Source: Octopus bimaculoides (taxonomy: Eukaryota). From it: a stretch of DNA of 64,000 nt. Positions within the stretch are counted from its first letter, which is position 1, and each line of letters begins with the position of its first letter. The notes under the pieces are model-generated. The model had not been told where the DNA came from. It worked only from the letters and a program-made list of their open reading frames with translations, and ran no database searches. The stretch is from the NCBI RefSeq assembly GCF_001194135.2, contig NC_068993.1:6543958-6607957 (forward strand), given 5' to 3'. Positions 2,618-20,719 of this stretch are shown piece by piece. The position numbers and the translations under genes are program-made.

Positions 2618-2658
<41 letters not shown>

Positions 2659-4714
2659 CTAGCACCATCACCATAAGGGATATTAGACTGTCATTTCTAT
2701 CAGGTCAAGCAGATAAGGAGATTACAGGTAGGATCTCTCACTAGGTTGCTTTTTTTTTTTCTCATCTAAAATACACTTCCATTATATTCTTAACCATTTT
2801 TTTATAATTAGAAAGGTGGTATTGAATTGATGTGGGATTGGATAGAAAAATATGCTGTTCCAGGAATCTTCCCACTCACAGACAGTAATGGTAAAGAACT
2901 GAAACTGTACGACCAATATTTCCTGCCAGACAAAACCAACAGGCGTCTTGGAGGCATTCGTCTGAGACAGATAAGAATGGTAAAAGGTAAATATAATTTA
3001 CAAACAGTGATTATTCCATTTTGTTTCTTACCATTTTGCCCAAGAACCTGTTTCGATTATGCCTTGTAGCATTCAACTACATCTCTTTACATTCTGAGTT
3101 CAAATCCTTCCAAGGCTGGCTTTGTTCTTTATCCTCTTGGTTTCATCATCGTTTAACATCATGTTCCATACTGGCATGGAGTGAATAGTTTTGAGGGAAT
3201 CCTGTGGAACCAAGGAGTGCAACATGCTCCAATGTCTGCCTTAATATGTCTTCTATGAGTGGATACCCTTCTTAATGTCAACCAATTCGCAGAATGGACT
3301 GGGTGTTGTTTTTTTGTGCCACAAGAACTAGTGAGATTACTATGTAGCTTGCAAGGCTATGAACCACAAGAAAGACAACTTTATGCTAGGAGATAAGGAA
3401 CTATGCAGTTGAGGTGGGCCGGAAGTATAGGGTCAGTGATGTCACACGAACGGCCGAGGGGCCTTGCTGGAAGAGAAATGAGGCAGGTCATGTAAGCAGA
3501 AGCATGACTAACATGGGCCTCTTTTGCGTTGGGACTTTTGCTCGGGATGAATGTGGTGGCTGCATGAGTTGAGTGAGTTGGTAATAAGGTTCTGGTCAGA
3601 GTAGGGTTCCAATGGATATATCCCAGTTGGAAAGGATCAACATTACAAAAGAACCTGCTAGGTGAATTATGCCTTCTTCCCCCATACCATAAGCTATTTT
3701 GGCCCTCGTGCATTTTTCTCTCTCCCACCCCTTTCTGAATGATATGTCAACAAAAATAAGGAGTGGTATCAACGCCGTCATTACTTAATTACTTTGTGTG
3801 TTTCCAGTTCCATGTCACATGTCAAGAATAATCAAAATGTGCATTCCAAACTATTCTGCAGAACATGAAGATACAAAGGATTATCTACCAGGTAAACATC
3901 CATCATAATTATTGTCATCACTGTCATCTTCATCATCATCATCATCATCATCCCCATCAACATCATTTTTGTTTTACCGGTCACTTTTACATGCTCACAT
4001 GAGTTGGATGGAATTTGCAGAAGGAGATTTACTATACTTGGGTGCCCTTTCTGTCACCGACCCTCATATGTTTCCAAGCAAGTTAACTTTTCCTCGTGAC
4101 CACACATATTTTCATAGAAGTTTACAAATAAAGGACATCGGTTGTTTACAACTATCATGCAATAATAAGACAACAACAACAACAACAACACACACACACA
4201 CACATAGATACAAAGACATATACACATCCACATATGCTAGAGTTTTTTCAGTTTCTCTCTACCAAATCCACTTGCAAGGCTTTGGTTGGCCCAGGGCTAT
4301 AATACAAGAGACTTGACCAATGCATCATGCAATGAAACTGAACCTGAAATCATGTGGCTGGTAAGCAAACTTCTTAACCACAAGTGCCTTGCCCGCACCT
4401 ATATATACAGTGACCCGCAAAAGTTTACAACGCACAATCAAAAATCCAAATTTACATATATTGAGTCAATGCAGGTTAATGAAATTTCCACTGTTTATGA
4501 AATTGTTCGTAATAAATTCAATGCAACAATCAGAATTACATAATAATGAGCAGAAACTAAACTCAAGGCACTGCAGGAAGACCTGGAAGCATATAAAGTC
4601 CATGTGAGCAAGGATACAATATATGTTAACTTGAGCTTTTCCCTGTGTGTTTTAAACTTTTGCGAGTCACTGTAGTTATAGAAGTACAAGCTTAGCTGGA
4701 TATATGTGTATGTG

Positions 4715-4747
<33 letters not shown>

Positions 4748-6222
4748 GTATGTATGTAGTGTGTATGTATGTATGAATGTTGTGTTATGCAATGTGGTCT
4801 TAAAAAAATGTATAAACTGTCCAGAATTTGAAACCACATATACATGGTCATGAGTGGAAGCCTGTTACCACTAGACCATGACCCTTTTACATGTGCATTT
4901 CAGGAAATAATAAAATGATTTAATCATTGTTATAATTACTCTTCCTTAATGCAGGCTGGAAAATTGGTGCCAAGCAGAAAGAAGAGGATAAATATATAAC
5001 TGCTGCATTCAAATATACTTCTGAAGAAAAAGCTGGATATAGCTTCATTCATTATGGAATACAAGGAAGTTATAAAAGTGCTGGTTATATCATTGATATA
5101 AACGAGAGACACAAGAAAGCAAAATCATTGTTCGAGAAACTTCGTTTGAACACCTGGATAGACGAGCGTACCCGAGTGGTAACCATTGACATTAGCACAT
5201 ACAATGCTAATTCTGGGCTTTTCACATCAACTAAAATTGTGATTGAGAGATTGTCCTGTGGTAGAATGGAGCCATCTATTCTTTCACTCAGCTTCAAGTT
5301 CCATCCATTTGTTGATCCTCTGGATTACTTGGTGCTGCTGATAATTATCATCGTTGGAATTCTGTGTTTGATAACTTTGGCAGGAGTTGTCATAGCCATT
5401 AAGAAACGACGCATGCAAGCCCTGCGTGAATATCACACCCTCATCAATATGGCAACTGTAATCTCCATCCTAGTCATCCAGATTGGCTTCGGTTTGAGAA
5501 TTGACGCTCTTCTTCAAATTCAGGATAAATTGGTCAAGAATCCAGGTAAACAGTTTTAATTTTAATATATATGTTTTTAGTGCAATGTGGTGACAGAATC
5601 ATTAGCACACCAGGCAAAATGCTTAGTGGCATTTCGTCTGATTTCACATTTTGATTTCAAATTCCGCCAAGGTCAACTTTGCTTGTCGTCCTTTCAGGGT
5701 TGATCAAATAAGTACCGGTTGAACACTGGAGTTGATGTGAACGACTTTTCCCTCACCTGAAATTGCAGGCCTTGTGTGAAAATATGAAATTAAGGCATTC
5801 CTTTTTGTGAAAGAGCGTAGGCTTGAAACATCAAAAATTCTTCCATTTTTCCAGAGCGTCAAATTAATATATCTTGTTTGTTGCTCCCTTACCTGGCTCT
5901 GTTTTTTTTTGTATTTTGTTTTTGTACATTTTGAACCTTATGCATACACACACACACACACACACACACATACACACACAAACACACACACACACAAATA
6001 TCAGGTCATCCTATAAGTAATGTCCTAAATATCATATATGTAATTTCCATTGAATTTTACAATTTTCTAAAATGCCAAATGAGATTGATTTTTTCGTACA
6101 TAGACTTGCCTAACTTGCTTCTCCTTACAATCTACTCCTCTACCTGCTCAAATTCAAATCTCTTAAGTACTATGAAGTGTATTCTGCATGGAGAATACCT
6201 GTCTCTAATCTATCTGTCTATC

Positions 6223-6293
<71 letters not shown>

Positions 6294-6311
6294 AAATGTA
6301 AATATATATAA

Positions 6312-6348
<37 letters not shown>

Positions 6349-7571
6349 NNNNNNNNNNNNNNNNNNNNNNNNNNNNNNNNNNNNNNNNNNNNNNNNNNNN
6401 ATATATACATACATATATGTATGTATATATATATATATATATGTATATATATGTATATATATATATGCACATATATGTATATATATTACACTCTCTGAGT
6501 GGTTGGCGTTAGGAAGGGCATCCAGCTGTAGAAACTCTGCCAAATTTAGATTGGAGCCTGGTGTTGCCATCCGGTTTCACCAGTCCTCAGTCAAATCGTC
6601 CAACCCATGCTAGCATGGAAAGCGGACGTTAAACGATGATGATGATGATGATGATGATTCTGTATAGTTATTACATGATTTTATTATTTCAGATGCCTAT
6701 GTATCAGGGAACTTAATGGCATCCAGAGTGATGGTGTATTTTGCTGGTCTCTGTGCCTGTGTGGTAGTATTCGCCATCAAGCTATTACAACCACTTGCCT
6801 TGAATTACCACCTGTTCTTGATGAAGGCCAGTATCATGCTATCGCTGCCATCCATCGCATCATTCAGCGTCGTCCTTTTCTTCCTTATGACAGCTTTTGC
6901 AATCGGCATTCATATAACTTTCAATAACGTATCGATATATTTCATCGATTTGAAATCCACCTACCTGGCTCTCTTCCGCATTTTCCTTGCCATGGGCAAA
7001 TTCAAAGAGACTTTCGGTTTAGATAACATCATGTCGAACATGGTTTTCTTCATCTACACCTTGCTCGTGTCTATCATTCTGTTAAATGTATGCATTAGTA
7101 TTATCAACGATACGTTTAGCTTTGTCAAAAGCAGGATTAATTCTCTTGGATTTGAATACTGTTTTGATTTCAAACTCAACGAACATTTCTGGTATAGAAT
7201 GACCACTCTCTTTTACAAGAAGAAAATATCCAGTGAAGGTTATTATTATTATTATTATTTTCTTTTCTTTTTTGTTTATTCTTTTATTCTTTTATTTGTT
7301 TCAGTCATTTGACTGCGGCCATGCTCACAGTATAGGCGACTTGTCAGACTCAAATGGCTGAAGGCACATAGCCTCTCTACAACCGGAAGAAGAAATACAA
7401 ATCCAACTCGCCATTATGTATGTCTTCCTCTAGTTGTAGAGAGGTCATATGTCTTCAAACATTTGAGTCTGATGAGGCTGACGCTTTATATGTGCAAAAT
7501 CAATGGTCACTCTCTGATTGGCCACAGCATTTTAACTTCCTACAATGTATGTGTGTATATATATATGTGCA

Positions 7572-7637: not shown

Positions 7638-8744
7638 TGTGTGTGTGTGTGTATATATATATGTTCCTTTTTCTTCCTGGGAAAACGAAGCATCAGAATG
7701 CATGACCTGATGTCAATCCTGCTTCTCAGTTCAAGTATTTGAGCCAAGTTGATTCCAACATCTGGACCAACTTCGTGCAAGCATGAAGGCATGCTGACAA
7801 AACGCTGCTCCTCTAAATGGAAACCTTCCTGCTGTCATGGTATTGTAGCACAAAGCAAAGCAGGCCTTGCCTTCCACTCTAGAAAATATATAATGAATGA
7901 TGCCCAAGCAGTCAAGCAAACGGATTCCTTAACTCGTTCCTTTTGCCAAAAGGTTTGCAAAGTACTGGAAGGCCTCAAGAGATGGTCACATATTTTGTGG
8001 ACACATTCGTATCCATAGAACATGATAAACGCTTTATTTTACTGAATCCTCATTTGTTGTTCATGACAAGAGAATCCATCAAATATATTGGTGTTAGTAT
8101 ATGTGTATACGTTTCCATTATAATGTAATAATATTATTCTAGACATACATTTTTCTAAAACTTCATTTTCCTTTTTGTCTGCTTCAAGAGAAATATTTAC
8201 CAGTGAGAATGAATTCTCAGATAACAAAGAAAGTATTTCAAAAAGTAAGTTAACTTTTTCCCTGATTTTAATCCGATGTTTTATATTTTCTTTTCACAAA
8301 CTGGAATTAATTCTTACCAAAGTGTTTCATCTGGACTCTTACAATAGTAGAATTAATTCTTTATATTTAAACTGGCCATATCCAGTCCAAATATTCTACA
8401 TGTTTTATGTTGAAACTGGCCAGATCCAACCAGTCACACATAACCTACAATATTTACATTATTTACATTTGATGGATATTTGTCCTCATCTTGTTCATTG
8501 TTAACACAACATTTCAGCAGATATCCCTTCCAGCCTTCATCAGGTGTCTTGGGGAAATTTCGAACCTTCACTGGATGATACCTCAACTTCAATTCTCACC
8601 ATCCATACAGTGTAAAGAGAGGGATTGCTCAGTGCCTAAAACGTTGAGCAAAGAATATAAGTAGCGATTGTGATACACACCATGAAGAAATGATCAACTC
8701 AATAACAATCTGTTAAGCAACAACTACCCAAAATAATAATAATG

Positions 8745-8801
<57 letters not shown>

Positions 8802-11800
8802 TTGAAAAATACCTTAGGAAATGAGAACCTAGGTTCGAAATTTCCCCAAGACACCTGATGAAGGCTGGAAGGTATATCAGCCGAAACGTTGTGTTAACAA
8901 CAAAGAAGATGAGGACAAATATCTGTCAAATGTAANNNNNNNNNNNNNNNNNNNNNNNNNNNNNNNNNNNNNNNNNNNNNNNNNNNNNNNNNNNNNNNNN
9001 NNNNNNNNNNNNNNNNNNNNNNNNNNNNNNNNNNNNNNNNNNNNNNNNNNNNNNNNNNNNNNNNNNNNNNNNNNNNNNNNNNNNNNNNNNNNNNNNNNNN
9101 NNNNNNNNNNNNNNNNNNNNNNNNNNNNNNNNNNNNNNNNNNNNNNNNNNNNNNNNNNNNNNNNNNNNNNNNNNNNNNNNNNNNNNNNNNNNNNNNNNNN
9201 NNNNNNNNNNNNNNNNNNNNNNNNNNNNNNNNNNNNNNNNNNNNNNNNNNNNNNNNNNNNNNNNNNNNNNNNNCAAAGGTCTCGGTCAGTAGTCATCGCC
9301 TCGGTGAGGCCCAATGTACGAAGGTCTTGCCTCACCACCTCAGCCCAGGTCTTCCTGGGCCTACCTCTTCCACGGGTTCCCTCAACTGTTAGGGTGTGGC
9401 ACTTTTTCACACAGCTATCCTCATCCATTCTCACCACATGTCCATACCAGCGCAATCGTCTCTCTTGCACACCACAACTGATGCTTCTAATGTTCAGCTT
9501 TTCTCTCAAGATACTTACAGTCTGACGGGTATTCACATTGACATTACACATCCAACGGAGCATACTGGCTTCATTCCTTGCGAGCTTACGTATGTCCTCA
9601 AATTCCTCATCTCTTAAATATAGAACTATAACCTACAATGTCTGTCATTCTAAAAATAAACAATCACAGCTTCAAAATTTTGAAAGGATAAGATACTTCA
9701 TAAAGCATTACAATTGATAAATTAATCTGAATGCTAAAGAGTTAAGCCCTCACCAAAATATTTTATTTACCATCTTGGAGTAGAATAAATTCGCAGCAGA
9801 ATATTTTGATTGAAGTACAAATATTGTTGTCCTGTATTATATCATCACCACCACCCTGTGTTACATCATTGCCATCACCATCATCATCATCATCATCATC
9901 ACCACCATCACCACCATTACCACCACTACCAAGACCACCACCACCACCACCACCACCACCACCACCAATTCGTTATTTCTGGGAGTTTAGTGTTTAGTTT
10001 TCCTTCACTCACAAGATATCGGTGATGCCAATGCTACCTAATGTTCTCCTAATTTGACTAATGTTACTTCCTTTTTTCACAAACTTTCAGTTCGATCTTC
10101 TCGTTTGTGAGTCCATCAGTGACTTTGAAGAAATAAGTTGGATGCTGCTGAAGAAATACATAAATTGTTATCTGGATATGCATCTCAGGAAACCTGACTT
10201 TGAAAGCGTCCAGACCAAATTACACGGTGCCAGTGATGCTATGAAGCTTTTCCAGCCAGTTTTCACAGACCTGTGCCAGATAGGAAACCAATTGGAAGTT
10301 AAAAAGATCTGCAATGGAGGAACATCATGGACACTTTGGTAATAACAGGAACATTTAATACGATATAGATATTAAAAATTTGCTTAATTTTATTTTTGAC
10401 ATAGACATCATAAAAATGTATAAACTTCAAGAGAATGTTAAATAATTTAGTTTTGGAACAGTGGGTCTTGAAGCATTTACAGCTATAAATAATAGCATGT
10501 AAATATTAAGTTAAAAAGACACTTGCTTAGAAAAAGTTGAAGGCTGCCCATGGGATATGAACCTACATCTCCTGTAAATATGATAGGTGTTCTACCATTG
10601 AACCAAAGCAATTTTTGCCAATTTAAAAACTGAAGTTTTAACTCCAGGTCAGGCTTGACTAAGCAGACTTTGACAAGAAGAGTTCAGCTGTGACCACCCC
10701 ATCAGTGTTTTGTATATCTAAGCATCATAGGCATATAGAAGCAGTGAAGAAGCAAATATGGTAAACCGGTGCATGAAATACCTTATTATATTTACTATAT
10801 TTAATGGCATAAAAGAGTGGCATATTAGGTGCAACTTCCTTTTCAGCAATGTGTATTCTGGGAAAAACAGTTTGTAATGTATTAAAGTATGCATTGTTAC
10901 ATGTTCTGATCCACGGTTCACTTCCTGTGCTCTGCAATGCTTCATCAACCAAAAAGGGACAGAAGCTTCAGTGAAGGAGTTCTTCACCTCGAAGAACAAG
11001 AACTGGTATCAGCGTGGGAACAAAGAACTGGTAGAAAATCGGTTTCACATGGTGCAAAACGATGGCCTCTCTGTTGAATGCAAGGCAGCGTTTTTTGTAA
11101 CTTGATAAATAAGGTAAATAAGTTACCAAAATATTGATTTCAAATTTTAGCATAAAGCCAGCATTTTGTGGGGCGGGAATAAGTCAATTACATCGACCCC
11201 AGTGTTTAACTGGTACTCATTTCATCGACTCCGAAAAGAGGAAAGGCAAAGTTGACCTCGGTGGAATTTGAACTCAGAAAGTAAGGATGGATGAAATGCC
11301 ACGAAACATTTTGCCTGGTGTGCAAAACAATTCTGCCAACTTGCCGCCTTAACATGGCAAAACATTTGACTCAACACAATGATAAAGGCCCAACTTTGCA
11401 TATAGGATCCAAGATGATATTTTAAAAACCGTTTTGGGGCAGAAATTGCATTTTATATGCCTTCAAATATGGGAGTTTAATTTTTCATTTTTCTATGTTC
11501 AATTTCCATACCAGTAACAGTTCTGCTTTTTGTCTCTCTGGGGCTGATACAATGACTAACAACTATGTCAGTGAAGGAAGGAATTTGTTCCAATTAGTAG
11601 TCTTGAAACGGTATACAGAAAGTTTTATTTTTACATCCATAAATTATATATAATTTTTTCATTATTATCTGTCCTATATAATTCCTACTGTTACTAATTA
11701 AAAATTTTCTTTTAATTCTTTTTAAAATTCCAAAACAACAAACAAACGAAAAATGAACATAACTAATTAAACAATACATAAAATAAACAAACAAACATAT

Positions 11801-13822
11801 ACAAAAAAAAAAAAAACAGGTATTATTGGAAATATAAGGACCCAGTTCTGAAAGTATGCTGTAAATGCCACAATGAAGTTCCTGAAATATTATGTTATGA
11901 TGTGACTGATAAAAAATATCAGATGTTACCACAAATGCAACAATCCCAGTTTGTGGGTCCTGTCGTCTGGATTTGTCAACCAACAACCTGTAATGTAGAC
12001 CAGGTAAGGATCACTAAGTTAGTCTTACTCTGCAGGAGTCATCAGTTAAGCTTGTACAAAAAGGGGTTATTAATTTGGTCCAGTGATATTTTCTTGGTCA
12101 GAGACCAGTGATTAAAACACAAGTATGATTATATAGGGGTGGTCATAGCCGCGTGGTTAAGAAATTTGCTTCGTAACCATGTGGTTTTGAGTTCTCGCCC
12201 AATGTATGTATATGTATGTTCTCTCCCAATGTATGTATATGTAGTCTTTTATGCTTGTATATTTTACAGTCAACCTTAGAGATTACATCATTCTGTCATG
12301 AAACCCTTCACCAATATCACTGCTGTGAACTCATTGAAAGCAGTGATGGAATTAATTGGTCAAATTATGATGATGATGATGATATGATTGACTGCAATGA
12401 AGTGATGTCTCCTCATTTAGAAGAGGTATGAGAAACAGTTAACGATCTTTGTTTAGTAGATATTATGTGTATATATATACATGCTTGTGTATGTATATGC
12501 ATATGTATCTCTGTGTGTGCATATAGATATATGTTTATATATATATATTATATATATTTATATTATATATATATATATAATATATGCATTTTATATATAT
12601 ATATTTATATATATGTATATGTAATATATATAACTGTTATCTATCCCATTCAAATATTTAATAATAGCGTTTAATAATCTAATAATTTAGCTTTTACTCA
12701 ACCTTTGCTTGTTGCCACTCATTCCACAACACACACACACAATTCCTTCCCAGCCAGTAACTGAAAAAGCCTTCTGCCCAACCTACACCTCGCATACATC
12801 TCATACAAACTTCTTACATATCTATGCTGTAACCACAAATCTCTTGTTTTTCTGTTCCACATTGCATCACCTCTGATACTTCTGACACCTGTGCCGCCAC
12901 CACCACCACCATGGTTTTTATGGTGAACATCAACATCCTCAACAACAACACCAACAATAGCATAGTTACGAAGATGAGAAGTTGATAAGACAGCTACCCT
13001 GTTATATTGCTCTCACCAAGCGGATGAGAGCAGAAACCTGGCTGTTTCATGGCACAAAGCTGGTCTCGTCTTTGGAACCAAACCTCTCCATTATGATCCC
13101 ACTAGAAGCAAGTCTCTCTCAGAAGATCGTCCTAAGACTTAAAGTAAGATATATCTTCATCTCTTAGACTTGGATATGTATGTATGTGTGTATGCATGTA
13201 TATTTGAAAGCATGAATTTTGTGTGTGTGTGTGTGTGTGTTTGTGTGTGTGTGAGTACGTGTGCATGAAAGCTTGAAAGTGTGACTGAAAGCTTGGGGAG
13301 GGGAAGTGGCAGGACTAGTAGCAAAATATTTTCATGTAATACAATACAGGTTTTTCTAAGGATGTTGGCAGTACTTGTCAGCACAATCTTTTGGATTCCT
13401 CTGAGCCATGGTTCTCCTGGGATATAATCTACGTTTCTGATATCCCTTTCTTATCATACCTATTATTATTATTATCATCATCATCATCATCATTATTGTC
13501 ATTGTCATCGTTGTTTTTGTTGTTGTTGTTATTATTATTAGTCGCATAAAATTAATACTGTGACCATGTTTTCTTCTAGTTAAACCCTTACCAACCGATA
13601 CCTCAGTTGTTCCTCACCTTCAACATAGATTTACAGCAACCAATCACCGTCCATTTTTCCACTACAAGCAATACTACATTTCCAGGTAAGTGAACCAACA
13701 CAAAGAAACCCATCTCTTCAACCAATGCCACAGAAGTATTGTTCTCATTACTACTGCTGCTCTCATCTTGTTGTTACTGTTGCTGTTATTCTTACCAACA
13801 TCAACTTGTCTTGTTGGTTTGT

Positions 13823-13857
<35 letters not shown>

Positions 13858-15646
13858 TGGTGGTTGTCTACTCCTTAAACAGAGTTTGACCACCTCCTGC
13901 ATCTACACCTTAGCCCTTTCATGGCGTCTGATGTGGCTTTTTAAACCAGACAGTGTTTTGAAAAAACACCCACACAGATTGCACCTCTGATTTGCACTAC
14001 CAATACCTGCAAGTAAGTTCTGCTCATTGTGGATCCTAACATGTCTTTTAAGACCCCCATTGGATTTGCAAACCCTCTGGCACACACCACATTCAAACGT
14101 GTGCACAGACATATAATCAGAATAGCTGGGTGAGGTTTGTTTTCCATGGGTTCGCAGGTGAGATTTGAGGCCAGCCAAGGACAGACATGGTATATATACA
14201 TCTGTGTGTGCACGTGCATGGAATTTTGACTGGCAACTGTTGGCTCTCGTTGGAGCTCATCAATACAATGAAACTCAAGACCAACTATTTGGTCTATGTT
14301 TAGTAAAAACATTTAGGAACTAAACACGATCGGGTTTCTTTCCTTCTCTTATTTTTTCTTTCTTCCTTTCTCCCTTAACAGTGGAGAAGAGGTGTGATGA
14401 TGATGATTGTATATATATATTTCTTCTTTCTTTTCCTGTGCCTTAAATGCATGTGTGCGGTTTGTGTGGTAGTGATAGTGGTGGTGGTGCATGTGTGAGT
14501 GAAAACAAAACCCACTTAGAGCTGAGACAAGTTGTCAAGTGTCTTAATAAAGGGCTGGTACCAGTAAAAAGCTTTATCTGCATGGAATCTTGCACCCCAC
14601 ATCTGTATAAAATCTTGATACTATAAACTAAACTTTCTGTTTCTAGATTTGCAGCTGTATTCCAAGAACCGTTCCTCACAATGGACTGAGGAAGCCATTC
14701 AGATATCCCAAAACCAAGGAATTAGCTTTAAGATAAAGCCACCCTCAAAGTAAGATCTTGTTTGTCTTTTATTATTATTTTTATTATTACTGTGTTTATT
14801 GTTAAGGCAAACTGGCAGAATAATTACTGCACCGGAGAAAATATTTTGCACCATTTCATCCGGCTCTTTATGTCCAAAATTCAAATTCCACTTGATGTTG
14901 ATTTTGCCCTTCATTCTTTCAGAGCTGGTGAAATAAGTACCAGTTCAGTTTTGGGGCTATATGTAATCGACTTACCTCTACCCTCAAAATTTGTTGGCCT
15001 TAGGCCAAAAATAAGGAATTATCACTGTGAGTGTTAATCCTAAAAGAGTGGATTTATGTAATTAGAAATCAAAAATAAAAGCTGGGACAAATGTACTTCC
15101 ACCATGCAGCTTGCCCAAGGGCGTTTATACATCCATATTTGTTAACGGTTATTTTTAATACTTTTCTCGCTGGATTGCATGTTCGCTTCTGTTTTTTCCC
15201 ATCTGTGATTTTATTTTTGATCTTCTATATATATGAAGATATTTCCTCCGTCTGGTTGCTTTTCTTTCTAGAAAACAAGATGTTACATTGTGGAACTCTT
15301 ATTCTAATAAGTTGTGTCTCTTTATCAACCAATGAGATACATCCTGAAGCGGCTGTTGAGTGTCTTACTCATGAGGGATCGATGTGGCGAAACAATTGTC
15401 ATGATTAATAATGAATTCTTGTATATTCCATCTTCTGTCTTTCATTTGTCATATATATATATGTGTGTGTGTGTGTGGTGCATGTATGTATAATATTTAT
15501 GAATACGATACTTATATCTGATGCATGCATGCTTTCAATTATCATTTTATTTTATTTCAATCCAGATGTGAAACTGTATATATGTTGAAGCCATCACACA
15601 TACTGTGGGTGAGTATGCATATATTTACACACACACACAGATACTG

Positions 15647-15677
<31 letters not shown>

Positions 15678-18600
15678 TACACACGTACTGAGAGAAACAA
15701 TATTTCTTGTTATCATTATTATCATTATTATTATAATAATCATTATTATCATTGTTGTTGTTGTTAAGGCAGCGAGCTTGCATAATCGTTAGCATGATGA
15801 GCAAAATGATTCAAGGCATTTCATCTGTACTTTTTCTCTGAGTTTAAATTCCACCAAGGTTGACTTTGCCTTTCATCTTTTTGGGATAAGTAACAGTTAC
15901 GCACTGGGGTCGATGTAATCGATTAGCCCCTCCCCCCAAATTTCAGGCCTTATGCCTATAGTAGAAAGGATTATTATCATTATCATCATCATCATCATCA
16001 TTATTATTATTATTATTATTAAGGTGGCGAGCTGGCAGAATCATTAGCATGCTGGACAAAATGCTTAGTAGTATTTCACTCATCGCTATGTTCTGAGTTC
16101 AAATTCCACCAAGAACGACTTTGCCTTCTATCCTTTCGGGGGTTGATAAATTAAGTACCAGTGAAACACTGGGGCTGATGTAACTGTCTAGTCTCCTCCC
16201 TGCAAATTTCAAGCCTCGTGCCTTTAGTAGAAAAGAATATTATTATTATTATTATTTCATTTCTAGGACTGGCAGAAACAGCTGCAATGTATCAAAGGTA
16301 AGATGGCATTGATTCTAAGAATATAATCTATTTTTAGAATTTATCAGATACTCAAGACTCCAGACATTAATCTCCCACCATCCCCCTCTCTAGTGTATGA
16401 GTGTATGTGTGATAAAGAGATTGTGTGTGAATGTGTGTGTGTGTTAGGGCAAAGATCTGATAACTAGTGACCTACAACTAGTAACCAGGTGGACTAGAAC
16501 AATCTTTTCATGGCTGCGAATTTGGTGAGCAAACCCTAAAACCCTACAAAGTCTGCTTGATGAGAGGGTGGTTTCAGGGGTCAGTCTGCAGGATGAGAAA
16601 CAAAACCCGATTGGTCAGCCAATAATATGTGTGTGCGTGAATGTGTGTATAAAAGCATGTGGCTTAGGGATTAGATTATTCGGCTCATGATTGTAAGGTT
16701 ATGAGTTCGATTCCTGGAGACACATTGTGTCCTTGAGCAAGACACTTTATTTCACATTGCTTTACTCCACTCAACTGGCAAAAATGAGTAGTCCTCTGCC
16801 CTGTGTTTCAAAGGGCCAGCCGTGTCACATTTTGTATCACAATGACTCTCCCTGAGAACTGTATCGAGGGTATACGTGTCTATGGAGTGCTCAGCCACGT
16901 TCTCATTCACGAACAGTCTGTTTTGTTGATTGGATCAACTGGAACACTTGTCGTAAGCGACAGAGTGCCAGTCAGATATACATATATTTATTTCCTGCCA
17001 TCTCTGAAGAGTATCATGTGTGTTAGTTAACTGCCCTGTAACCTAACATCTAGTGTGAAACCAATTGGCAAGTTTGGCTGAAATGGATCTATAATACAGT
17101 ATATTTTGATTTATATATACATACATACATACATATATAAATATATATATATATATATCCACACACATGTAGATATATGTATGTGTTTTTGTGAGTGAAC
17201 AAGCATGTGTGCATGTACATTTTTGTGTGTATGAAGATGTACATGGGAGAAGAATACCTGAATATATAAGCATGAATTTGTACCATTTTCTACTTTCCAA
17301 GATCCTGTTAACAAAGATTTCCTTCTGCAAGTATCAACTGCCATTGGAAACAAATGGCAACTTCTGGCACAAGAACTGAACGTCTCTGGGCTGGTTATGA
17401 AACGGATAAAGACAACTGCCAGTGATAAAGCTCCTCATGTGGCCTGTTTCAACATGTTAATTGCATGGCATAACTCTCTACCTGTTACAAGCGATAAGGT
17501 CAGTTATTATAGCTATTATTGTTTAACCATGGGCTAGCTTCCTTTGAGTAGATCTTTCATCAAAAGCATTCCACCACAGACATATACATGCATAAACACG
17601 CATACACACACTCACACATGTATAACTTAAACCTTTAGCACACATAAGTGCATAATGGTGCCATACGAACTTCCCTCTATAATTGCAGGTGCACTGGGTC
17701 GCATTGAAAGGGGACATAACTTATACGGTAACAATGCAGCTACAGTATGCTAAAGGTCAAAGCCATTTTTAACTCTTTTGGTACCAATATGTCTGAGATG
17801 GTCTCTGGTTCTTATATAAAATCTCTCATTTTTAAATAAGTTTTCAGATCCACTTTTTTTTAAAGTTGGCATGGATTGAATGAGGAATTCTTGTAGTGGT
17901 ATGCTATGGTAAAATATATTCATGGACATAAATATCAACTGCTTAGGAAATTCATTGGCAGGAGCTCCAGGGCACCCCAATCATATCAACAAGCTTGTCA
18001 ACTGTTCAGTGACGGTCCTCCAAGATCAGTTCATGCATTTTTGTGAGGTTTTCATTCGTTCGGGATGTCGACGGTCGCCCTGAATGAGGTTGGTCTTCAA
18101 GCGACAAGTGACCATTCCTAAAGTATGAAAACCACTTGTGAACTTATGTTTTGCTCATGGCAGCATTGTTGTAAGCTGTTTGAAGCACGACAGCTGTTTT
18201 CTCCAGCAGAAAACAGAACTTTACAGAAGCAGGCTGTTCCTTTGTTTCAGCCGTCGCAAAAATCAATGAACAAAGGAGAAGCACCACTAAACAAAGATGC
18301 ACCACATGGCAGTAGGACTACATCCAATGCTGCCAGAGGGCAGACTGATGCCTGAGGGTCACATCAACTGGCTTCTAAAGGCAGAAGCCTGAACTACAAC
18401 AGTTTTATCCCACAGAGAATGTTTCCAATTACTTTTGTGTAACCCCTTGTACACTGAAACTGTTTAAAAAAAAAAATTCCAACATTTCAGGTAAAACCCC
18501 TCACTTCAGCTCTCTCAGTCCTTGGCTACAAACAACTTGCTGAACAATTAAACACAACAGCAGAAGAGTACAGTCACAAGTGTCAAACAGCTCTTTCTGG

Positions 18601-20719
18601 TAAACATTCAGGAAAATTTTTCTAATATTTATAATTAATTAGATTTTGTTAATAACTAGCAGCTATCTATGCAGGGCCTTGCTTTGTTTCTCTCACACTT
18701 TAACCCTTCATTCCATTGCATAAAATCGCCACCTTCTTTAATGTAACCCCATTCAGGGATCTAAGTTTTGCAAGCTTCACAGCAACTTCACTGGTGCTGG
18801 TGCCATGAAAAATGCTCAGTACTTGTAAAGTGGTTGGTGCTAAGAAGGGCAGGCACCCAGCTGTAGAACCCATGCCAAAGCAGACTTTAAACCAATCAGA
18901 ACCTGTCAGAAAATTCAACCCATGGCAACTGGAAACATAGGCATCAAATAATTATGATGATGGAATAAATATCAATCATGTGCTTAAGCTTAGAGATTAG
19001 CTATCACTTGTGCGAGAAAGTGGCATGGTATCACGTACCAGTCTTGCTAAAACACTGGTGTTTATGTACATTATTTACATTTGGTGGATATTTGTCCTCA
19101 TCTGGTTTGTTGTTAACACAACATTTCGGCTGACATACCCTCCAGCCTTCATCAGGTGTCTTGGGGAAATTTCGAACCTGGGTTCTCATTCCTAAGGTAT
19201 TTTTCTTCTCACCTGAATAATAATATCGAAAAATACCTTAGAAATGAGAACTTTCCCCAAGACACCTGATGAAGGCTGGAGGGTATATCAGCCGAAACGT
19301 GTTAACAACAAACAAGATGAGGACAAATAGCCATCAAATGAACATAATTCCTCATCTCTAAATATAGAACCAGTGTTTATGTTGTCAGAAGCACACAGAT
19401 ACCATTTTGTTGTCTCTCCTATTCTTTGGCCCAATAGAACATCGTGGAAATGACAGATGGAGAGCAATGGGCATGCAACTTTTTACAAAAGTATGGTATC
19501 TATCAATCATAGGTGCCATATTTTCCTACAAAATTTGTCCTTTTAAAAATGCAATAACCCCCTTATTGAAATCTCAGAACTACAAAATAATGTCTAAATT
19601 ATTTAAAACAATGTAAATAAATAAGCTTTACATTTGATAGAAAACTTTGAATGCTAAAGGGTTAACAAAATTTTGTTCGAGAAGGAAATCAATATTTTAA
19701 TTGAATGCATAAATTCCATGGTTTTTTTGCAGATTGTGAGAAAAAGAAATTCTTTGATTTCCTTTGCCGTTCTAAAGCTCTGGCAATCAGATGGCAGGAA
19801 CTGGCCACATATCTGGGTATTTCAGAAGAAACACAGGAAAACATTGACAAACGGGTTGATCTATCTCTTCGAGAAAAGTGCTTTTCTGTCTTGGAATGTT
19901 GGCAAAAATATGATCAAGAACTACTCCAGAAATCTCTCACAAAACTCAGTCACCAGTTCCTTGCTTGTAAGTATTCAAAATCTCGAGTTCCAATGCATTT
20001 TCATAGGGTTTATGCTTTCAGTTGCTGTCATTTGCTACAAACACGTATATCTGTGAGTTCCCTCTGTGTTTACATTTGGAATAAAAATGGTAAGAACTTT
20101 CAGGTCTCCCTTGAGAATGAATTTGTTACAGAAACTATGCGGAAGCCCATCACACATACAGAGAGACATCTATCTATTATTTGATATTACCATCATTCAT
20201 ATTGAATGTTTTCTATATTTTAACTAATATAGGCGCAGGAGTGGCTGTGTGGTAAGTAGCTTGCTTACCAACCACATGGTTCCAGTTTCAGTCCCACTGC
20301 GTGGCACCTTGGGCAAGTGTCTTCTACTATAGCCTTGGGCCGACCAAAGCCTTGTGAGTGAATTTCGTAGACGGAAACTGAAAGAAGCCCGTCATATATA
20401 TATATATATGTATGTGTGTTTGCGTGTCTGTGTTTGTCCCCCCACCATTGCTTGACAACCGATGGTGGTGTGTTTACATCCCCGTAACGTTCGGCAAAAG
20501 AGACCGATAGCATAAGTACTAGGCTTCCANNNNNNNNNNAAAAAAAAAAAAAAAAAAAAAAAAAAGAGTATATCTAATTTTCATCATTTGATCATTAATA
20601 ACTTTTATATTTCTAAACTGATTTCAGGTAGAGTTCCTGCTTTCAAACAGAAAACTGAAGCAACACCACGACCACAACCACCACCACGACCAACAAAAGT
20701 CACCTTTGATATTCCATAA
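42..20719 (+). CDS. Polycystin-1-like (PKD1L/REJ family) channel with C-terminal ZU5-ZU5-death-death tail; 5' part lies outside the window
   Basis: Exons 42-690, 1665-1779, 2338-2576, 2812-2986, 3808-3891, 4955-5545, 6693-7238, 8189-8244, 10091-10338, 11820-12003, 12270-12425, 12961-13143, 13580-13685, 14647-14749, 15566-15608, 16267-16297, 17302-17498, 18491-18599, 19733-19966, 20628-20719. All are GT-AG with compatible phases, no internal stop, TAA at 20717-20719. PKD motifs: YYFECNNWLAFDKGDG (PLAT end), FTRVQRLS, FVQPLKV, LRQIR, WIDERTRVVTIDISTYNAN, LLNVCISIINDTF. Confidence 0.9.
1665..1779 (+). CDS. PKD1L exon (end of TM5, loop)
   Basis: ctag|VVFTAMLLSFIFKSPSTEEDKYETDLCSDRFNDLSQFP|gtaaat; phase 0 to 1. 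Confidence 0.85.
2338..2576 (+). CDS. PKD1L exon (S1 helix)
   Basis: ttttcag|VPKESLK...FRCLYIVLLLILIAN...KKFSQ|gtaaat. Confidence 0.9.
2812..2986 (+). CDS. PKD1L exon (TOP/polycystin domain)
   Basis: ttag|KGGIELMWDWIEKYAVPGIF...RRLGGIRLRQIRMVK|gtaaat. Confidence 0.92.
3808..3891 (+). CDS. PKD1L exon (TOP domain)
   Basis: ccag|PCHMSRIIKMCIPNYSAEHEDTKDYLP|gtaaac; phase 1 to 1. Confidence 0.88.
4955..5545 (+). CDS. PKD1L exon (TOP domain, S2, S3)
   Basis: gcag|GWKIG...AFKYTSEEKAG...LRLNTWIDERTRVVTIDISTYNANSGLF...KNP|gtaaac. Confidence 0.95.
6487..6658 (+). mobile_element. RTE LINE 3' UTR fragment ending in (GAT)n, young family
   Basis: Near-identical copies at about 30835-31010(-), 43845-44008(+), 57388-57545(+). 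Confidence 0.8.
6693..7238 (+). CDS. PKD1L exon (S4, S5, pore, S6)
   Basis: tttcag|DAYVSGNLMASRVMVYF...STYLALFRIFLAMGKF...LLNVCISIINDTFSFVK...KKKISSE|gttatt. Confidence 0.93.
7331..7490. mobile_element. Foldback MITE-like hairpin with TATA ends
   Basis: tcagactcaaatggctgaaggcacatagcctctctacaac pairs with gttgtagagaggtcatatgtcttcaaacatttgagtctga. Confidence 0.6.
7700..8020 (+). mobile_element. Degenerate LINE 3' end with eroded C2H2 motifs
   Basis: QSKAGLAFHSRK and FCQKVCKVLEGLKR resemble the zinc-finger tail at 13903-14178. Confidence 0.4.
8189..8244 (+). CDS. PKD1L cytoplasmic-tail exon
   Basis: ttcaag|EKYLPVRMNSQITKKVFQK|gtaagt; this acceptor gives the phase 1 to 0 bridge into 10091 (an AG at 8189-8190 would give another frame). 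Confidence 0.65.
8452..9627. mobile_element. Penelope-like inverted-arm retroelement with 12-bp target-site duplication
   Basis: Inverted arms containing ctgatgaagg...ccgaaacg; TSD ataacctacaat at 8440-8451 and 9628-9639. Confidence 0.6.
9274..9597 (-). mobile_element. RTE-clade LINE, reverse-transcriptase C-terminal fragment
   Basis: RRLRWYGHVVRMDEDSCVKKC...GRGRPRKTWAEVVRQDL; runs into an N gap. Confidence 0.9.
10091..10338 (+). CDS. PKD1L tail exon (helical linker, start of ZU5-A)
   Basis: ctttcag|FDLLVCESISDFEE...VKKICNGGTSWTL(W)|gtaata; phase 0 to 2. Confidence 0.75.
10542..10612 (-). pseudogene. Degenerate tRNA-like sequence (tRNA pseudogene or SINE head)
   Basis: D stem gttc/gaac around TGG, T-loop ggttcatatccc, about 71 nt, several stem mismatches. 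Confidence 0.4.
10962..11150 (+). mobile_element. Mariner transposase C-terminal remnant
   Basis: EASVKEFFTSKNKNWYQRGNKELVENRFHMVQNDG resembles the mariner C-terminus (FF.SK...WY.RGI..L..RW......DG.YF). Confidence 0.75.
11820..12003 (+). CDS. PKD1L tail exon (ZU5-A)
   Basis: aaaacag|YYWKYKDPVLKV...LPQMQQSQFVGPVVWICQPTTCNVDQ|gtaagg; phase 2 to 0. Confidence 0.75.
12270..12425 (+). CDS. PKD1L tail exon (ZU5-A C-half)
   Basis: tttacag|STLEITSFCH...ELIESSDGINWSNY...PHLEE|gtatga. Confidence 0.78.
12961..13143 (+). CDS. PKD1L tail exon (ZU5-A/ZU5-B junction)
   Basis: aatag|HSYEDEKLIRQLPCYIALTKRMRAETWLFHGTKLVSSLEPNLSIMIPLEASLSQKIVLRLK|gtaaga; exact acceptor uncertain. Confidence 0.75.
13580..13685 (+). 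CDS. PKD1L tail exon (ZU5-B)
   Basis: ttctag|LNPYQPIPQLFLTFNIDLQQPITVHFSTTSNTTFP|gtaagt. Confidence 0.8.
13856..14300 (-). mobile_element. 5'-truncated LINE 3' end with three tandem C2H2 zinc fingers
   Basis: SLAGLKSHLRTH (first finger frameshifted), CGVCQRVCKSNGGLKRHVRIH, CNLCGCFFKTLSGLKSHIRRH; short 3' UTR ending in accaccacc and a (TA)n tract. Confidence 0.65.
14647..14749 (+). CDS. PKD1L tail exon (ZU5-B)
   Basis: ttctag|DLQLYSKNRSSQWTEEAIQISQNQGISFKIKPPS|gtaaga; phase 1 to 2. Confidence 0.8.
15566..15608 (+). CDS. PKD1L tail micro-exon
   Basis: tccag|(K)CETVYMLKPSHILW|gtgagt; open only with phase-2 entry, which is the phase supplied by the previous exon. Confidence 0.75.
16021..16237 (+). 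mobile_element. SINE family B
   Basis: gagctggcagaa...ctgagttcaaattcc...ccttc.atcctttcgggg...aagtaccag. Other copies at about 5590-5790(+), 11155-11352(-), 15765-15970(+), 32298-32510(-), 38378-38584(-), 43262-43480(-), 53645-53850(+). Confidence 0.85.
16267..16297 (+). CDS. PKD1L tail micro-exon
   Basis: ttctag|DWQKQLQCIK|gtaaga; phase 0 to 1. Confidence 0.72.
16650..16975 (+). mobile_element. tRNA-derived SINE family C
   Basis: gagttcgattcc...ccttgagcaagacactttatttcac. Other copies at about 25282-25615(+), 35838-36115(+), 36290-36545(-), 53190-53505(-), 63685-63915(+). Confidence 0.8.
17302..17498 (+). CDS. PKD1L tail exon: death domain 1, helices 1-4
   Basis: ttccaag|DPVNKDFLLQVSTAIGNKWQLLAQELNVSGLVMKRIKTTASDKAPHVACFNMLIAWHNSLPVTSDK|gtcagt; not in the ORF track. 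Confidence 0.88.
17943..18410 (-). mobile_element. Mariner transposase N-terminal (HTH) pseudogene fragment
   Basis: KEQPASVKFCFLLEKTAVVLQTAY...HKWFSYFRNGHLSLEDQPHSGRPSTS...LILEDR, with in-frame stops. Confidence 0.85.
18491..18599 (+). CDS. PKD1L tail exon: death domain 1, helices 5-6 and linker
   Basis: tttcag|VKPLTSALSVLGYKQLAEQLNTTAEEYSHKCQTALS|gtaaac. Confidence 0.86.
19068..19370. mobile_element. Penelope-like inverted-arm element, second copy
   Basis: About 130-bp inverted arms around a short spacer; flanking direct repeat gtgtttatgt at 19058-19067 and 19373-19382. Confidence 0.6.
19733..19966 (+). CDS. PKD1L tail exon: death domain 2
   Basis: ttgcag|DCEKKKFFDFLCRSKALAIRWQELATYLGISEETQENIDKRVDLSLREKCFSVLECWQKYDQELLQKSLTKLSHQFLA|gtaagt. 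Confidence 0.88.
20231..20528 (+). mobile_element. tRNA-derived SINE family A
   Basis: A-box tggctgtgtggtaag, B-box-like gttcagtccc. Other copies at about 49926-50290(+), 59464-59835(+), 40905-41062(+), 37015-37392(-), 40120-40468(-), 44990-45252(-), 63057-63175(+). Confidence 0.85.
20628..20719 (+). CDS. PKD1L terminal exon (Pro-rich tail, stop)
   Basis: tttcag|(C)RVPAFKQKTEATPRPQPPPRPTKVTFDIP* followed by a second TAA. Confidence 0.8.

What the first reader, a model, noticed from the sequence alone, without database searches (positions are those of the whole stretch)
17302..19966. Two death domains in tandem at the end of a TRPP-family protein
DD1 (two exons, invisible in the ORF track) reads VSTAIGNKWQLLAQELNVS...RIK...CFNMLIAW...DKVKPLTSALSVLGYKQLAEQL. 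DD2 reads RWQELATYLGISEETQENI...SLREKCFSVLECWQ...LLQKSLTKLSHQFLA. Both show the W..LA..L and C..ML..W death-fold pattern. DD2 has a very short helix 4-5 loop and a different exon structure from DD1, which suggests separate acquisition or old divergence rather than a recent duplication. Tandem DDs could self-associate or nucleate an adaptor platform.
Basis: partly seen in the sequence, partly recalled or inferred. Interest (0 to 1): 0.75.

Follow-up and report, generated by a model that had tools for sequence, protein, structure and literature searches.

The report
Polycystin-1-like octopus protein with two death domains
An octopus membrane protein of the polycystin-1 (kidney-disease receptor/channel) family really does end in two conserved death domains, a pairing I found in no paper, and the pair was taken over as one ready-made block, introns included, from a different kind of mollusc gene.

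Summary
Exons 17302-17498 and 18491-18599 encode death domain 1 (DD1). Exon 19733-19966 encodes death domain 2 (DD2). A final exon, 20628-20719, lies outside the finding's coordinates and encodes a short tail with the stop codon.

All these exons belong to one 20-exon gene (43-20719, + strand). It is the orthologue of O. sinensis XP_036364125.1, a 2306-aa "uncharacterized protein" with PLAT, polycystin, PKD-channel and Death domains. That makes it polycystin-1-like rather than a 6-TM PKD2-type TRPP channel.

Both domains pass the Pfam Death cut-off. The AlphaFold model of the region matches solved death domains. Both are under purifying selection against O. vulgaris and Argonauta hians, with no indels or frameshifts. 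The Argonauta DD2 exon exists but was missed by its annotation.

The new point is the origin. DD1 plus DD2 align collinearly, as one unit, with the C-terminal double death domain of lophotrochozoan "DTHD1-like" proteins. Each domain matches its positional counterpart there. Three intron positions and phases are identical, and a fourth probably is. So the pair was acquired together by exon shuffling, not separately.

DD1 is most PIDD-like and DD2 most FADD-like. The 370-aa stretch between channel and DD1 remains unassigned. Function is inferred: a cytosolic docking module that binds other death domains. This is a new variant of a known kind, of moderate interest.

The parts
43..7238 (+). Exons 1-7 of the window part of the gene: 43-690, 1665-1779, 2338-2576, 2812-2986, 3808-3891, 4955-5545, 6693-7238. 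They encode transmembrane segments, the polycystin (TOP) domain and the PKD channel domain. Together they correspond to residues ~922-1721 of the O. sinensis orthologue.
   Evidence: tblastn of XP_036364125.1 (P0002) gives 82-97% identity per exon, and all internal exon boundaries inside the window are AG/GT. Pfam finds Polycystin_dom and PKD_channel on the exon translations and on the orthologue.
8189..16297 (+). Exons 8-16: 8189-8244, 10091-10338, 11820-12003, 12270-12425, 12961-13143, 13580-13685, 14647-14749, 15566-15608, 16267-16297. They encode a ~370-aa cytosolic stretch of unassigned fold between the channel and DD1.
   Evidence: tblastn and splice-site reconstruction. The stretch is conserved in Argonauta (phmmer E 1e-179 for linker plus DD1). 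Against O. vulgaris, dN/dS for exons 12-16 is 0.16. There is no Pfam or PDB sequence match. The AF2 model here is beta-rich but below pLDDT 50.
17302..17498 (+). Exon 17: DD1 helices 1-4 (DPVNKDFLLQVSTAIGNKWQLLAQELNVSGLVMKRIKTTASDKAPHVACFNMLIAWHNSLPVTSDK).
   Evidence: Pfam Death 29.6 bits for DD1 as a whole. AF2 pLDDT 83-94 on the orthologue. The phase-1 acceptor and phase-0 donor match those of the Lottia and Haliotis DTHD1-like genes.
18491..18599 (+). Exon 18: DD1 helices 5-6 (18491-18556), then the helical connector TAEEYSHKCQTALS (18557-18599).
   Evidence: The phase-1 donor lies inside the Asp codon (G|AT), identical to the DTHD1-like genes.
19733..19966 (+). Exon 19: DD2 helices 1-5 and the start of helix 6 (CEKKKFFDFLCRSKALAIRWQELATYLGISEETQENIDKRVDLSLREKCFSVLECWQKYDQELLQKSLTKLSHQFLA).
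   Evidence: Pfam Death 23.8 bits. The family profile matches the FADD death domain over its full length, E 7.7e-16. AF2 pLDDT 68-88 for helices 1-4. The orthologous exon is intact in Argonauta at L002 55609-55839.
20628..20719 (+). Exon 20: the end of DD2 (CRVPAFKQKTE), a Pro/Thr-rich tail ending in ...DIP, and the stop codon.
   Evidence: It matches the C-terminus of P0001 and P0002. It is conserved in Argonauta (ERVPAFRQTT...VEIP*).

Best explanation
The region is the 3' end of one gene for an octopod polycystin-1-like (LOV-1/PKD1-like) membrane protein. After the last pore helix, its cytosolic tail holds about 370 aa of unassigned, probably beta-rich sequence. The tail ends in a tandem death-domain unit made of a PIDD-like DD1 and a FADD-like, slightly compacted DD2.

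The unit was not assembled in place. It is a pre-existing DD1-DD2 cassette that a polycystin-1-like gene captured at the DNA level, introns included, from a lophotrochozoan 'DTHD1-like' gene. Those genes encode a ZU5-type domain plus a C-terminal double death domain. The capture happened at or before the octopod ancestor.

Most likely function (inferred, not shown): the pair acts as a cytosolic module that binds other death domains. It would tie the polycystin complex to death-domain-bearing partners, either signalling adaptors or kinases, or scaffold and trafficking proteins. In this role it would take the place held in vertebrate polycystin-1 by the C-terminal coiled coil.

My estimates: identity, architecture and origin about 0.9. 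'Works through homotypic death-domain binding to partner proteins' about 0.5. A specific link to cell death or NF-kB about 0.2.
For: One gene:
- 20 exons with an uninterrupted frame and canonical splice sites at all internal boundaries inside the window; 92% amino-acid identity to XP_036364125.1.
- The channel exon ends in phase 1 with no stop codon.
- Two separate annotation records, O. sinensis RefSeq and Argonauta GAB1601804.1, join the channel to the linker and DD1.
- Synteny with the downstream WD40 gene holds in O. vulgaris and Argonauta.

Real death domains:
- Pfam scores above the cut-off.
- Profile searches hit the PIDD death domain for DD1 (4.7e-9) and the FADD death domain for DD2 (7.7e-16).
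- The AF2 model is confident over DD1 and over DD2 helices 1-4.
- The top Foldseek matches in the PDB are nearly all death domains, with target-normalised TM 0.6-0.8 for stand-alone domains.

Selection:
- Against O. vulgaris, dN/dS is 0.26 overall (DD1 0.52, DD2 0.20; small counts).
- Against Argonauta, pN/pS is 0.27/0.69 for DD1 and 0.21/0.73 for DD2, with no indels.

Cassette origin:
- An exhaustive HMMER search returns mollusc and annelid DTHD1-like proteins. A single collinear alignment spans both domains.
- Similarity is position-specific: DD1 to DD1 and DD2 to DD2.
- Intron positions and phases are identical in Lottia and Haliotis.

Cytosolic location follows from homology of the channel region to PKD2 and PC1 structures and the established topology of those proteins.
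Against: - No transcript evidence was available here, so the exon joins rest on gene models, reading frames and conservation.
- The O. vulgaris annotation splits the locus into fragments. These are evidently faulty: one starts inside DD1 and another reads exon 14 out of frame.
- DD2 only just passes the Pfam cut-off in Octopus (23.8 and 22.7 bits against 22.6), and its helix 5-6 region is poorly modelled (pLDDT below 66).
- No binding partner, expression site or oligomeric state is known.
- The donor family itself has no established function.
- ZU5 and UPA, which accompany death domains in related modules, were not detected in the octopus tail.
Confidence: 0.6

Rival explanations
1. The tail is mainly a scaffold or trafficking handle rather than a signalling platform. 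On this reading, DD1-DD2 (with the unassigned linker) anchors the polycystin complex to the cytoskeleton or controls its endocytosis and recycling. Ankyrin death-domain modules and the double-death-domain proteins MACC1 and SH3BP4 work this way for other membrane proteins.
For: The closest relatives of the cassette are ZU5-type adaptor-like proteins, not death receptors. MACC1 carries ZU5, SH3 and double death domains, and its homologue SH3BP4 regulates clathrin-mediated uptake of receptors (PMC11585957). Weak SH3BP4-type Pfam hints appear on the tandem (DEATH_SH3BP4, E 0.047) and on a family member (SH3BP4_C).
Against: The SH3BP4/MACC1 hints are below significance. No ZU5 or SH3 domain was found in the octopus tail. 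At profile level, DD1 and DD2 are closest to the signalling death domains of PIDD, FADD and RIPK1.
Confidence: 0.25
2. There are two neighbouring genes, a polycystin-1-like gene ending near 7300 and a separate small DD-DD gene, which gene predictors fused by mistake.
For: The O. vulgaris record annotates a separate 160-aa protein and a 110-aa fragment upstream. No transcript data were examined here.
Against: - The 160-aa model starts at a Met inside DD1, and no in-frame ATG lies upstream in that exon.
- The 110-aa model reads exon 14 in the wrong frame.
- The channel exon ends in phase 1 without a stop codon.
- All nine intervening exons are in phase, conserved and constrained, with dN/dS 0.16 for exons 12-16 and 57% identity to Argonauta.
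- Two separate annotation records join them.
Confidence: 0.07
3. The death-domain exons are decaying leftovers of a shuffling event and no longer contribute a folded, functional domain. DD2, with its compacted helix 5-6 region, is the likelier candidate.
For: The Octopus DD2 is marginal against Pfam, which aligns only positions 9-59 of 86. AF2 confidence falls after helix 4. DD1 dN/dS against O. vulgaris is 0.52, though on small counts.
Against: DD2 has the lowest dN/dS of the tail (0.20 against O. vulgaris; pN 0.21 against pS 0.73 with Argonauta). It shows no indel or stop across octopods. Argonauta DD2 scores 27.9 bits over profile positions 6-81 of 86. The splice sites are conserved.
Confidence: 0.05

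Closest known systems
Polycystin-1 family (human PKD1 and PKD1L1-3, PKDREJ; C. elegans LOV-1). The orthologues are O. sinensis XP_036364125.1 and Argonauta hians GAB1601804.1, annotated 'location of vulva defective 1-like'.
   Same: The layout is the same: a membrane helix followed by PLAT, further membrane helices, then the polycystin (TOP) domain and the PKD channel domain. The best PDB sequence match is polycystin-1 (6A70_B, E 2e-38). The channel half matches PKD2 and PKD2L1 at about 1e-30.
   Different: Pfam detected no GPS or REJ domain in the orthologue. The cytosolic tail is not the short coiled-coil tail of PKD1. It is about 580 aa long and ends in two death domains, and I found no paper describing this combination.
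Lophotrochozoan 'death domain-containing protein 1-like' (DTHD1-like) proteins, for example Elysia GFS16165.1, Lottia XP_009056048.1, Haliotis XP_071113807.1, Aplysia XP_012935626.1 and Owenia CAH1799957.1.
   Same: They carry a C-terminal DD1-connector-DD2 unit that is collinear with the octopus one, at 21-28% identity to the octopus tail, with position-specific similarity. The intron positions and phases are the same before DD1, inside DD1 (..DK|V..) and between the domains (Asp codon split G|AT), and probably at the end of DD2.
   Different: They are soluble-looking proteins with a weak ZU5 match and no PLAT or PKD domains. Their DD2 is about 5 residues longer between helix 4 and helix 6, and the protein ends right after DD2.
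MACC1 and SH3BP4 (vertebrate ZU5-SH3-double death domain adaptors).
   Same: They are a precedent for two death domains side by side at a C-terminus downstream of a ZU5-type region (PMC11585957).
   Different: No significant sequence link was shown here (best E 0.047). The octopus tail has no detectable ZU5 or SH3 domain.
ZU5-UPA-DD supramodules of UNC5 receptors, ankyrins and PIDD1.
   Same: In each, a membrane-associated protein carries a cytosolic death domain at its C-terminus. The DD1 profile is closest to the PIDD death domain (4.7e-9), and ankyrin death domains are among the fold matches.
   Different: ZU5 and UPA were looked for in the 370-aa linker and not found. Those modules have one death domain, not two.
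Tandem death-fold units (tandem DEDs of caspase-8, FLIP and vFLIP; tandem CARDs of RIG-I and MDA5).
   Same: Two death-fold domains in one chain can form a rigid pair that seeds helical assemblies (PMC11874512). That is a possible working analogy.
   Different: They belong to different subfamilies (DED and CARD, not DD). The packing of the octopus pair was not determined.

Membership tests
Death domain (Pfam PF00531, death-fold superfamily) | Sequence match to the Death profile above the curated cut-off (22.6 bits) | tested here: met
   Window DD1 scores 29.6 bits. Window DD2 scores 23.8 bits, or 22.7 bits when the tail is included. Argonauta DD1 scores 29.4 bits and Argonauta DD2 27.9 bits. 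The Octopus DD2 value is marginal.
Death domain (Pfam PF00531, death-fold superfamily) | Six-helix antiparallel bundle fold | tested here: inconclusive
   The AF2 model of the O. sinensis tail has pLDDT 83-94 over DD1 and 68-88 over DD2 helices 1-4, but below 66 for DD2 helices 5-6. Nearly all the top Foldseek PDB matches are death domains, with target-normalised TM about 0.6-0.8 for stand-alone death-domain chains. The output does not say which of the two domains is matched. The feature is clearly met for at least one domain, most likely DD1. The C-terminal third of DD2 is unresolved.
Death domain (Pfam PF00531, death-fold superfamily) | Homotypic death-domain interaction or oligomerisation | not testable with these tools
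   This needs binding assays or multimer modelling with octopus partners.
Polycystin-1 family (PKD1-like, 11-TM type) | PLAT domain after the first membrane helix, and an N-terminal membrane block homologous to polycystin-1 | tested here: met
   Shown on the orthologue P0002: PLAT at 830-934 (56 bits), and residues 783-1058 match PC1 6A70_B at E 2e-38. In the window only the part from residue ~922 onward is present.
Polycystin-1 family (PKD1-like, 11-TM type) | Polycystin (TOP) domain plus PKD channel domain | tested here: met
   Window exons give Polycystin_dom at E 1.5e-10 and PKD_channel at E 3.2e-11. The orthologue gives 121.6 and 58.9 bits.
Polycystin-1 family (PKD1-like, 11-TM type) | GAIN/GPS autoproteolysis site and REJ module in the ectodomain | tested here: not met
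   Pfam finds no GPS or REJ in P0002 at E <= 0.01. That region lies outside the window and was not examined further.
Polycystin-1 family (PKD1-like, 11-TM type) | C-terminal coiled coil that pairs with a PKD2-type subunit | not tested
   AF2 places four low-confidence helices right after the channel (tail residues 11-85). No coiled-coil prediction was run.
TRPP proper (PKD2, PKD2L1 and PKD2L2, 6-TM channels) | Six-TM subunit without PLAT and without the extra N-terminal membrane block | tested here: not met
   PLAT and the PC1-type N-terminal membrane block are present in the orthologue.
DTHD1-like ZU5 plus double-death-domain proteins (lophotrochozoan) | C-terminal DD1-connector-DD2 unit, collinear and position-specific | tested here: met
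   phmmer aligns tail residues 372-560 as one stretch, E 1e-17 to 1e-23 against the small local set. The whole-library search with the partial query gave E 5e-8 to 6e-4. Cross-scores are 69-129 for DD1 vs DD1 against 30-57 for DD1 vs DD2, and 72-99 for DD2 vs DD2 against 23-53 for DD2 vs DD1.
DTHD1-like ZU5 plus double-death-domain proteins (lophotrochozoan) | Shared gene structure of the cassette | tested here: met
   Three introns are identical in position and phase in Lottia (L003) and Haliotis (L004). A fourth is identical if the octopod DD2 carries a ~5-aa deletion.
DTHD1-like ZU5 plus double-death-domain proteins (lophotrochozoan) | ZU5-type domain upstream of the death domains | tested here: not met
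   The octopus linker has no Pfam ZU5, UPA or FIIND hit at E <= 10 and no PDB sequence hit. hhalign against the family's upstream 800 aa gives probability 1%. The octopus protein shares the cassette but is not a member of this family as a whole.

The most novel reading that the evidence does not exclude
Octopods have a polycystin-type receptor/channel subunit that behaves as a death receptor of a new kind. Stimulus-driven clustering or conformational change of the polycystin complex would let its PIDD-like DD1 and FADD-like DD2 seed a helical death-domain assembly. That would couple mechanical or chemical sensing and calcium entry directly to caspase or NF-kB-type signalling.
Probability: 0.15. 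Interest if true: 0.8.

Novelty: new variant of a known kind. Interest (0 to 1): 0.5.

Why it matters
Polycystin-1 proteins are studied intensively because of kidney disease, yet how their cytosolic tails signal is still argued over. A natural variant whose tail is replaced by a recognisable, modular death-domain pair offers a clean case of a polycystin wired to a different output. It is also a well-documented example of exon shuffling, because the cassette was moved with its introns intact.

The case points to the poorly known DTHD1-like double-death-domain family as a source of signalling modules. Its practical value is modest until expression site and partners are known. The gene model already sits in RefSeq as an 'uncharacterized protein'. 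The O. vulgaris and Argonauta annotations of this locus are faulty and could be corrected from the coordinates given here.

Tried and rejected
1. **ZU5-UPA idea.** The stretch FHGTKLVSSLEPNLSIMIPLEAS looked like the start of a ZU5 domain, which suggested a ZU5-UPA-DD-DD tail. Tests did not support it. Pfam at E <= 10 found nothing. phmmer against PDB sequences hit only death domains. hhalign against 800 aa upstream of the death domains in ten DTHD1-like proteins gave one 39-column match at probability 1%. The AF2 model of the linker is beta-rich but below pLDDT 50, so fold matches there mean nothing. I treat the idea as unproven and do not claim it.

2. **Word-index protein searches were nearly blind here.**
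   - The channel exon found nothing.
   - A three-species alignment of the tail found nothing.
   - The reason is that the 2306-aa O. sinensis protein is filed under a 160-aa representative.

3. The exhaustive search would not take a spliced sequence, so the 160-aa fragment P0001 was used instead.

4. **Single-sequence AF2 of P0001 was useless** (pLDDT 41).

5. **Direct splice from exon 7 to exon 17.** Joining 7238 to 17302 is in frame, but I rejected it as the main isoform. Nine conserved, constrained exons lie between the two.

6. **Loss of DD2 in Argonauta.** The annotated protein suggested this, but the exon is present and intact downstream of the model.

7. **NCBIfam has nothing for this protein**.
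Full report
**Observation**

The window is cephalopod genomic DNA. It aligns along its length with Octopus vulgaris chromosome OX597826.1, at 83-91% in the long syntenic non-coding blocks and 91-98% in most exons.

The three exons named in the finding are real:
- 17302-17498
- 18491-18599
- 19733-19966

Each is bounded by AG and GT, and their phases are compatible.

Against Pfam Death (cut-off 22.6 bits), DD1 scores 29.6 bits (E 7.8e-7, profile positions 8-83 of 86). DD2 scores 23.8 bits (E 4.9e-5, profile positions 9-59 of 86). The two together score 48.4 bits with two matched stretches.

**The gene**

The only close relative in the 5.8-billion-protein index is a cluster whose representative is a 160-aa O. 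vulgaris fragment, CAI9731768.1. Its other member is O. sinensis XP_036364125.1, an 'uncharacterized protein LOC115218602' of 2306 aa.

That protein has PLAT (830-934), Polycystin_dom (1254-1458), PKD_channel (1463-1682) and Death (2104-2181). Its best solved relative is polycystin-1 (6A70_B, E 2.4e-38, over the first membrane helix, PLAT and the following helices). The channel half matches PKD2 and PKD2L1 at about 1e-30. It is therefore polycystin-1-like. It counts as 'TRPP' only in the loose sense used by some authors (PMC13402157).

tblastn plus splice-site reconstruction maps residues ~922-2306 onto 20 exons of the window (43-20719). These have an open frame, canonical splice sites at all internal boundaries inside the window, and 92% identity.

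- Nine exons (8189-16297, about 370 aa) sit between the channel exon (6693-7238) and DD1.
- A last exon (20628-20719) follows DD2. It supplies CRVPAFKQKTE, a Pro/Thr-rich tail and the stop codon.

**Is it one gene?**

The evidence points to one gene:
- The channel exon ends in phase 1 with no stop codon.
- Every following exon is in phase.
- DD1's first exon has no in-frame ATG upstream of the domain.
- The intervening exons are conserved in Argonauta (57% identity over linker plus DD1) and constrained (dN/dS 0.16 for exons 12-16).
- Two separate annotation records join channel, linker and DD1. One is the O. sinensis RefSeq model. The other is Argonauta hians GAB1601804.1, 'location of vulva defective 1-like', with PLAT, Polycystin_dom, PKD_channel and Death.
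- The downstream minus-strand WD40 gene is syntenic in all three genomes.

The O. vulgaris annotation breaks the locus into fragments that are visibly wrong. One begins inside DD1 and another reads exon 14 out of frame. No transcript data could be consulted, so a mis-fusion of two genes is kept as a low-probability rival.

**Are they death domains, and are they maintained?**

A profile of DD1 and its relatives finds the PIDD death domain (4.7e-9), then THOC1, RIPK1 and FADD. A profile of DD2 and its relatives finds the FADD death domain over its whole length (7.7e-16), then RIPK1. These profiles are dominated by the non-octopus relatives.

An AlphaFold2 model of the O. sinensis tail was built with a 14-row alignment. 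It has pLDDT 83-94 over DD1 and 68-88 over DD2 helices 1-4, with lower values for DD2 helices 5-6. Nearly all its top Foldseek matches in the PDB are death domains: FADD, ankyrin-G, TNFR1, RIPK1 and PIDD. Target-normalised TM is about 0.6-0.8 for stand-alone death-domain chains, and E-values are weak because the query is long and mostly low-confidence.

Selection against O. vulgaris:

| Region | dN/dS |
|---|---|
| Exons 12-19 | 0.26 |
| DD1 | 0.52 (9 non-synonymous, 5 synonymous changes) |
| DD2 | 0.20 |

The Argonauta annotation ends by reading into the intron after DD1. The DD2 exon is nevertheless intact 0.5 kb downstream (L002 55609-55839), and a conserved last exon follows.

Between the window and Argonauta, DD1 has pN 0.27 against pS 0.69 and DD2 has pN 0.21 against pS 0.73. 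There are no indels, and the splice positions are the same. The refutation condition named in the finding (no Death hit, or dN/dS near 1 with frameshifts) is therefore not met.

**Origin of the pair**

This is the main new result. An exhaustive HMMER search of 1.84 billion representatives with the 160-aa fragment gave 17 hits. Besides Argonauta, most are long lophotrochozoan proteins from Aplysia, Haliotis, Lottia, Elysia ('death domain-containing protein 1-like'), Sinanodonta, Batillaria and the annelid Owenia. They end in two Death matches, and several have a weak ZU5 match further upstream.

Four lines of evidence tie the octopus pair to this family:
- The window's tail residues 372-560, that is DD1, connector and DD2, align with their C-termini as one collinear stretch.
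- Octopus DD1 scores 69-129 against their DD1 but 30-57 against their DD2. Octopus DD2 scores 72-99 against their DD2 but 23-53 against their DD1.
- DD1 and DD2 profiles are only 17% identical.
- In the Lottia and Haliotis genes, three introns sit at exactly the octopus positions.

The three shared introns are:
- a phase-1 intron in the first codon of DD1;
- a phase-0 intron at ..DK|V.. (..DR|V.. in Haliotis) inside DD1;
- a phase-1 intron splitting the Asp codon G|AT between the domains.

A fourth phase-1 intron follows '..QLA' in those genes and '..FLA' in octopus. It is the same intron if the octopod DD2 lost about 5 residues between the helix-4 Trp and helix 6. That deletion is also what makes DD2 look compact.

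The duplication that made DD1 and DD2 is therefore older than the mollusc-annelid split. The octopod polycystin gene acquired the finished cassette at the DNA level. 'Separate acquisition' is refuted, and 'old divergence' is right.

**What remains open**

The 370-aa linker has no Pfam or PDB sequence match and no significant profile match to the DTHD1-like upstream region. Only a low-confidence, beta-rich model is available. My ZU5-UPA idea for it is unproven.

No relative combining PKD domains with death domains was found outside Octopoda in the library searched. That search used only the DD fragment, so absence in squids and cuttlefish is not established.

**Mechanism**

Shown: the architecture, the conservation, and the cytosolic placement (by homology to polycystin structures).

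Inferred: the tandem acts as a docking module that binds other death domains and links the polycystin complex to death-domain partners.

Two readings compete. One is a signalling platform, favoured by the PIDD-, FADD- and RIPK1-like character of the domains. The other is a scaffold or trafficking handle, favoured by the adaptor-like donor family and the MACC1/SH3BP4 precedent of double death domains (PMC11585957). Tandem DED and CARD units that pack rigidly and seed filaments (PMC11874512) are a working analogy only.

**Novelty**

I found no paper on a polycystin with death domains. A 2026 cephalopod TRP survey does not mention death domains. The gene model itself is already public but unnamed.

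I rate this a new variant of a known kind, with interest 0.5. It is a clean, conserved, lineage-specific rewiring of a much-studied receptor family. It is also one of many invertebrate death-domain shuffles, and it has no functional data yet.

Noticed in passing
window 24000-37000, minus strand: A multi-exon WD40-repeat gene lies tail to tail with the polycystin-like gene. The called orthologues are 926-928 aa in O. vulgaris and Argonauta and carry many beta-propeller Pfam families. The arrangement is syntenic in all three genomes.
   Followed up: partly
L001 (O. vulgaris OX597826.1) 1-4906 and 10001-16270: The O. vulgaris annotation splits this gene into fragments. One is a 160-aa protein that starts at a Met inside DD1. 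The other is a 110-aa product whose last exon reads the orthologue of exon 14 in the wrong frame. The genomic exons 12-20 themselves are intact.
   Followed up: yes
L002 (Argonauta hians BAAFZT010000020.1) 55000-57250: The Argonauta model GAB1601804.1 reads into the intron after DD1 and so lacks DD2 and the tail. Both exons are present and open, at 55609-55839 and about 57141 onward.
   Followed up: yes
L002 47434-50453: There are about seven extra copies of the start of exon 13 (..LNPYQPLPQLSLS..), spaced over 3 kb of the Argonauta intron region upstream of the copy that continues as the real exon. It looks like a local tandem duplication of an exon fragment.
   Followed up: no
window 19070-19348 (intron between DD1 and DD2); related copies at 8451-8567 and 8803-8935: A ~280-bp element with 50-64-nt inverted arms (88-90% complementary) is present at this intron position. 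Related copies occur elsewhere in the window and in O. vulgaris. It looks like a miniature inverted-repeat transposon.
   Followed up: partly
window 13903-14178, minus strand (intron 13): A 91-aa ORF carries C2H2 zinc fingers (Pfam zf-C2H2, E 7e-11, two fingers). It sits inside an intron of the polycystin-like gene and may be a fragment of a zinc-finger gene or a mobile element.
   Followed up: partly
window 18006-18115, minus strand (intron inside DD1): Short ORFs such as SLEDQPHSGRPSTSRTNENLTKMHELILEDRH resemble, from memory, the N-terminal region of mariner-type transposases. Pfam gave no hit on the 33-aa piece.
   Followed up: partly
window 20628-20719 and L002 ~57141-57250: The tail after DD2 is Pro/Thr-rich and variable. 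It keeps RVPAF(K/R)Q at its start and an acidic-Ile-Pro end (..FDIP in the window..FDIIP in O. vulgaris and O. sinensis..VEIP in Argonauta). This may be a short linear motif.
   Followed up: no
window ~6300, 8926-9276, ~45880-46250, ~50520-51000, ~58360-59270: Runs of N (2133 in all) mark assembly gaps, mostly inside microsatellite-rich (TA, CA, ACAT) sequence. None touches a coding exon of the gene.
   Followed up: no
window tail residues ~100-215 (exons 9-11, 10338-12425): This part of the linker is rich in Cys and His and conserved between Octopus and Argonauta (..CCKCHN..C..C..C..FCHETLHQYHCC..). It may be a metal-binding element. No family match was found.
   Followed up: no
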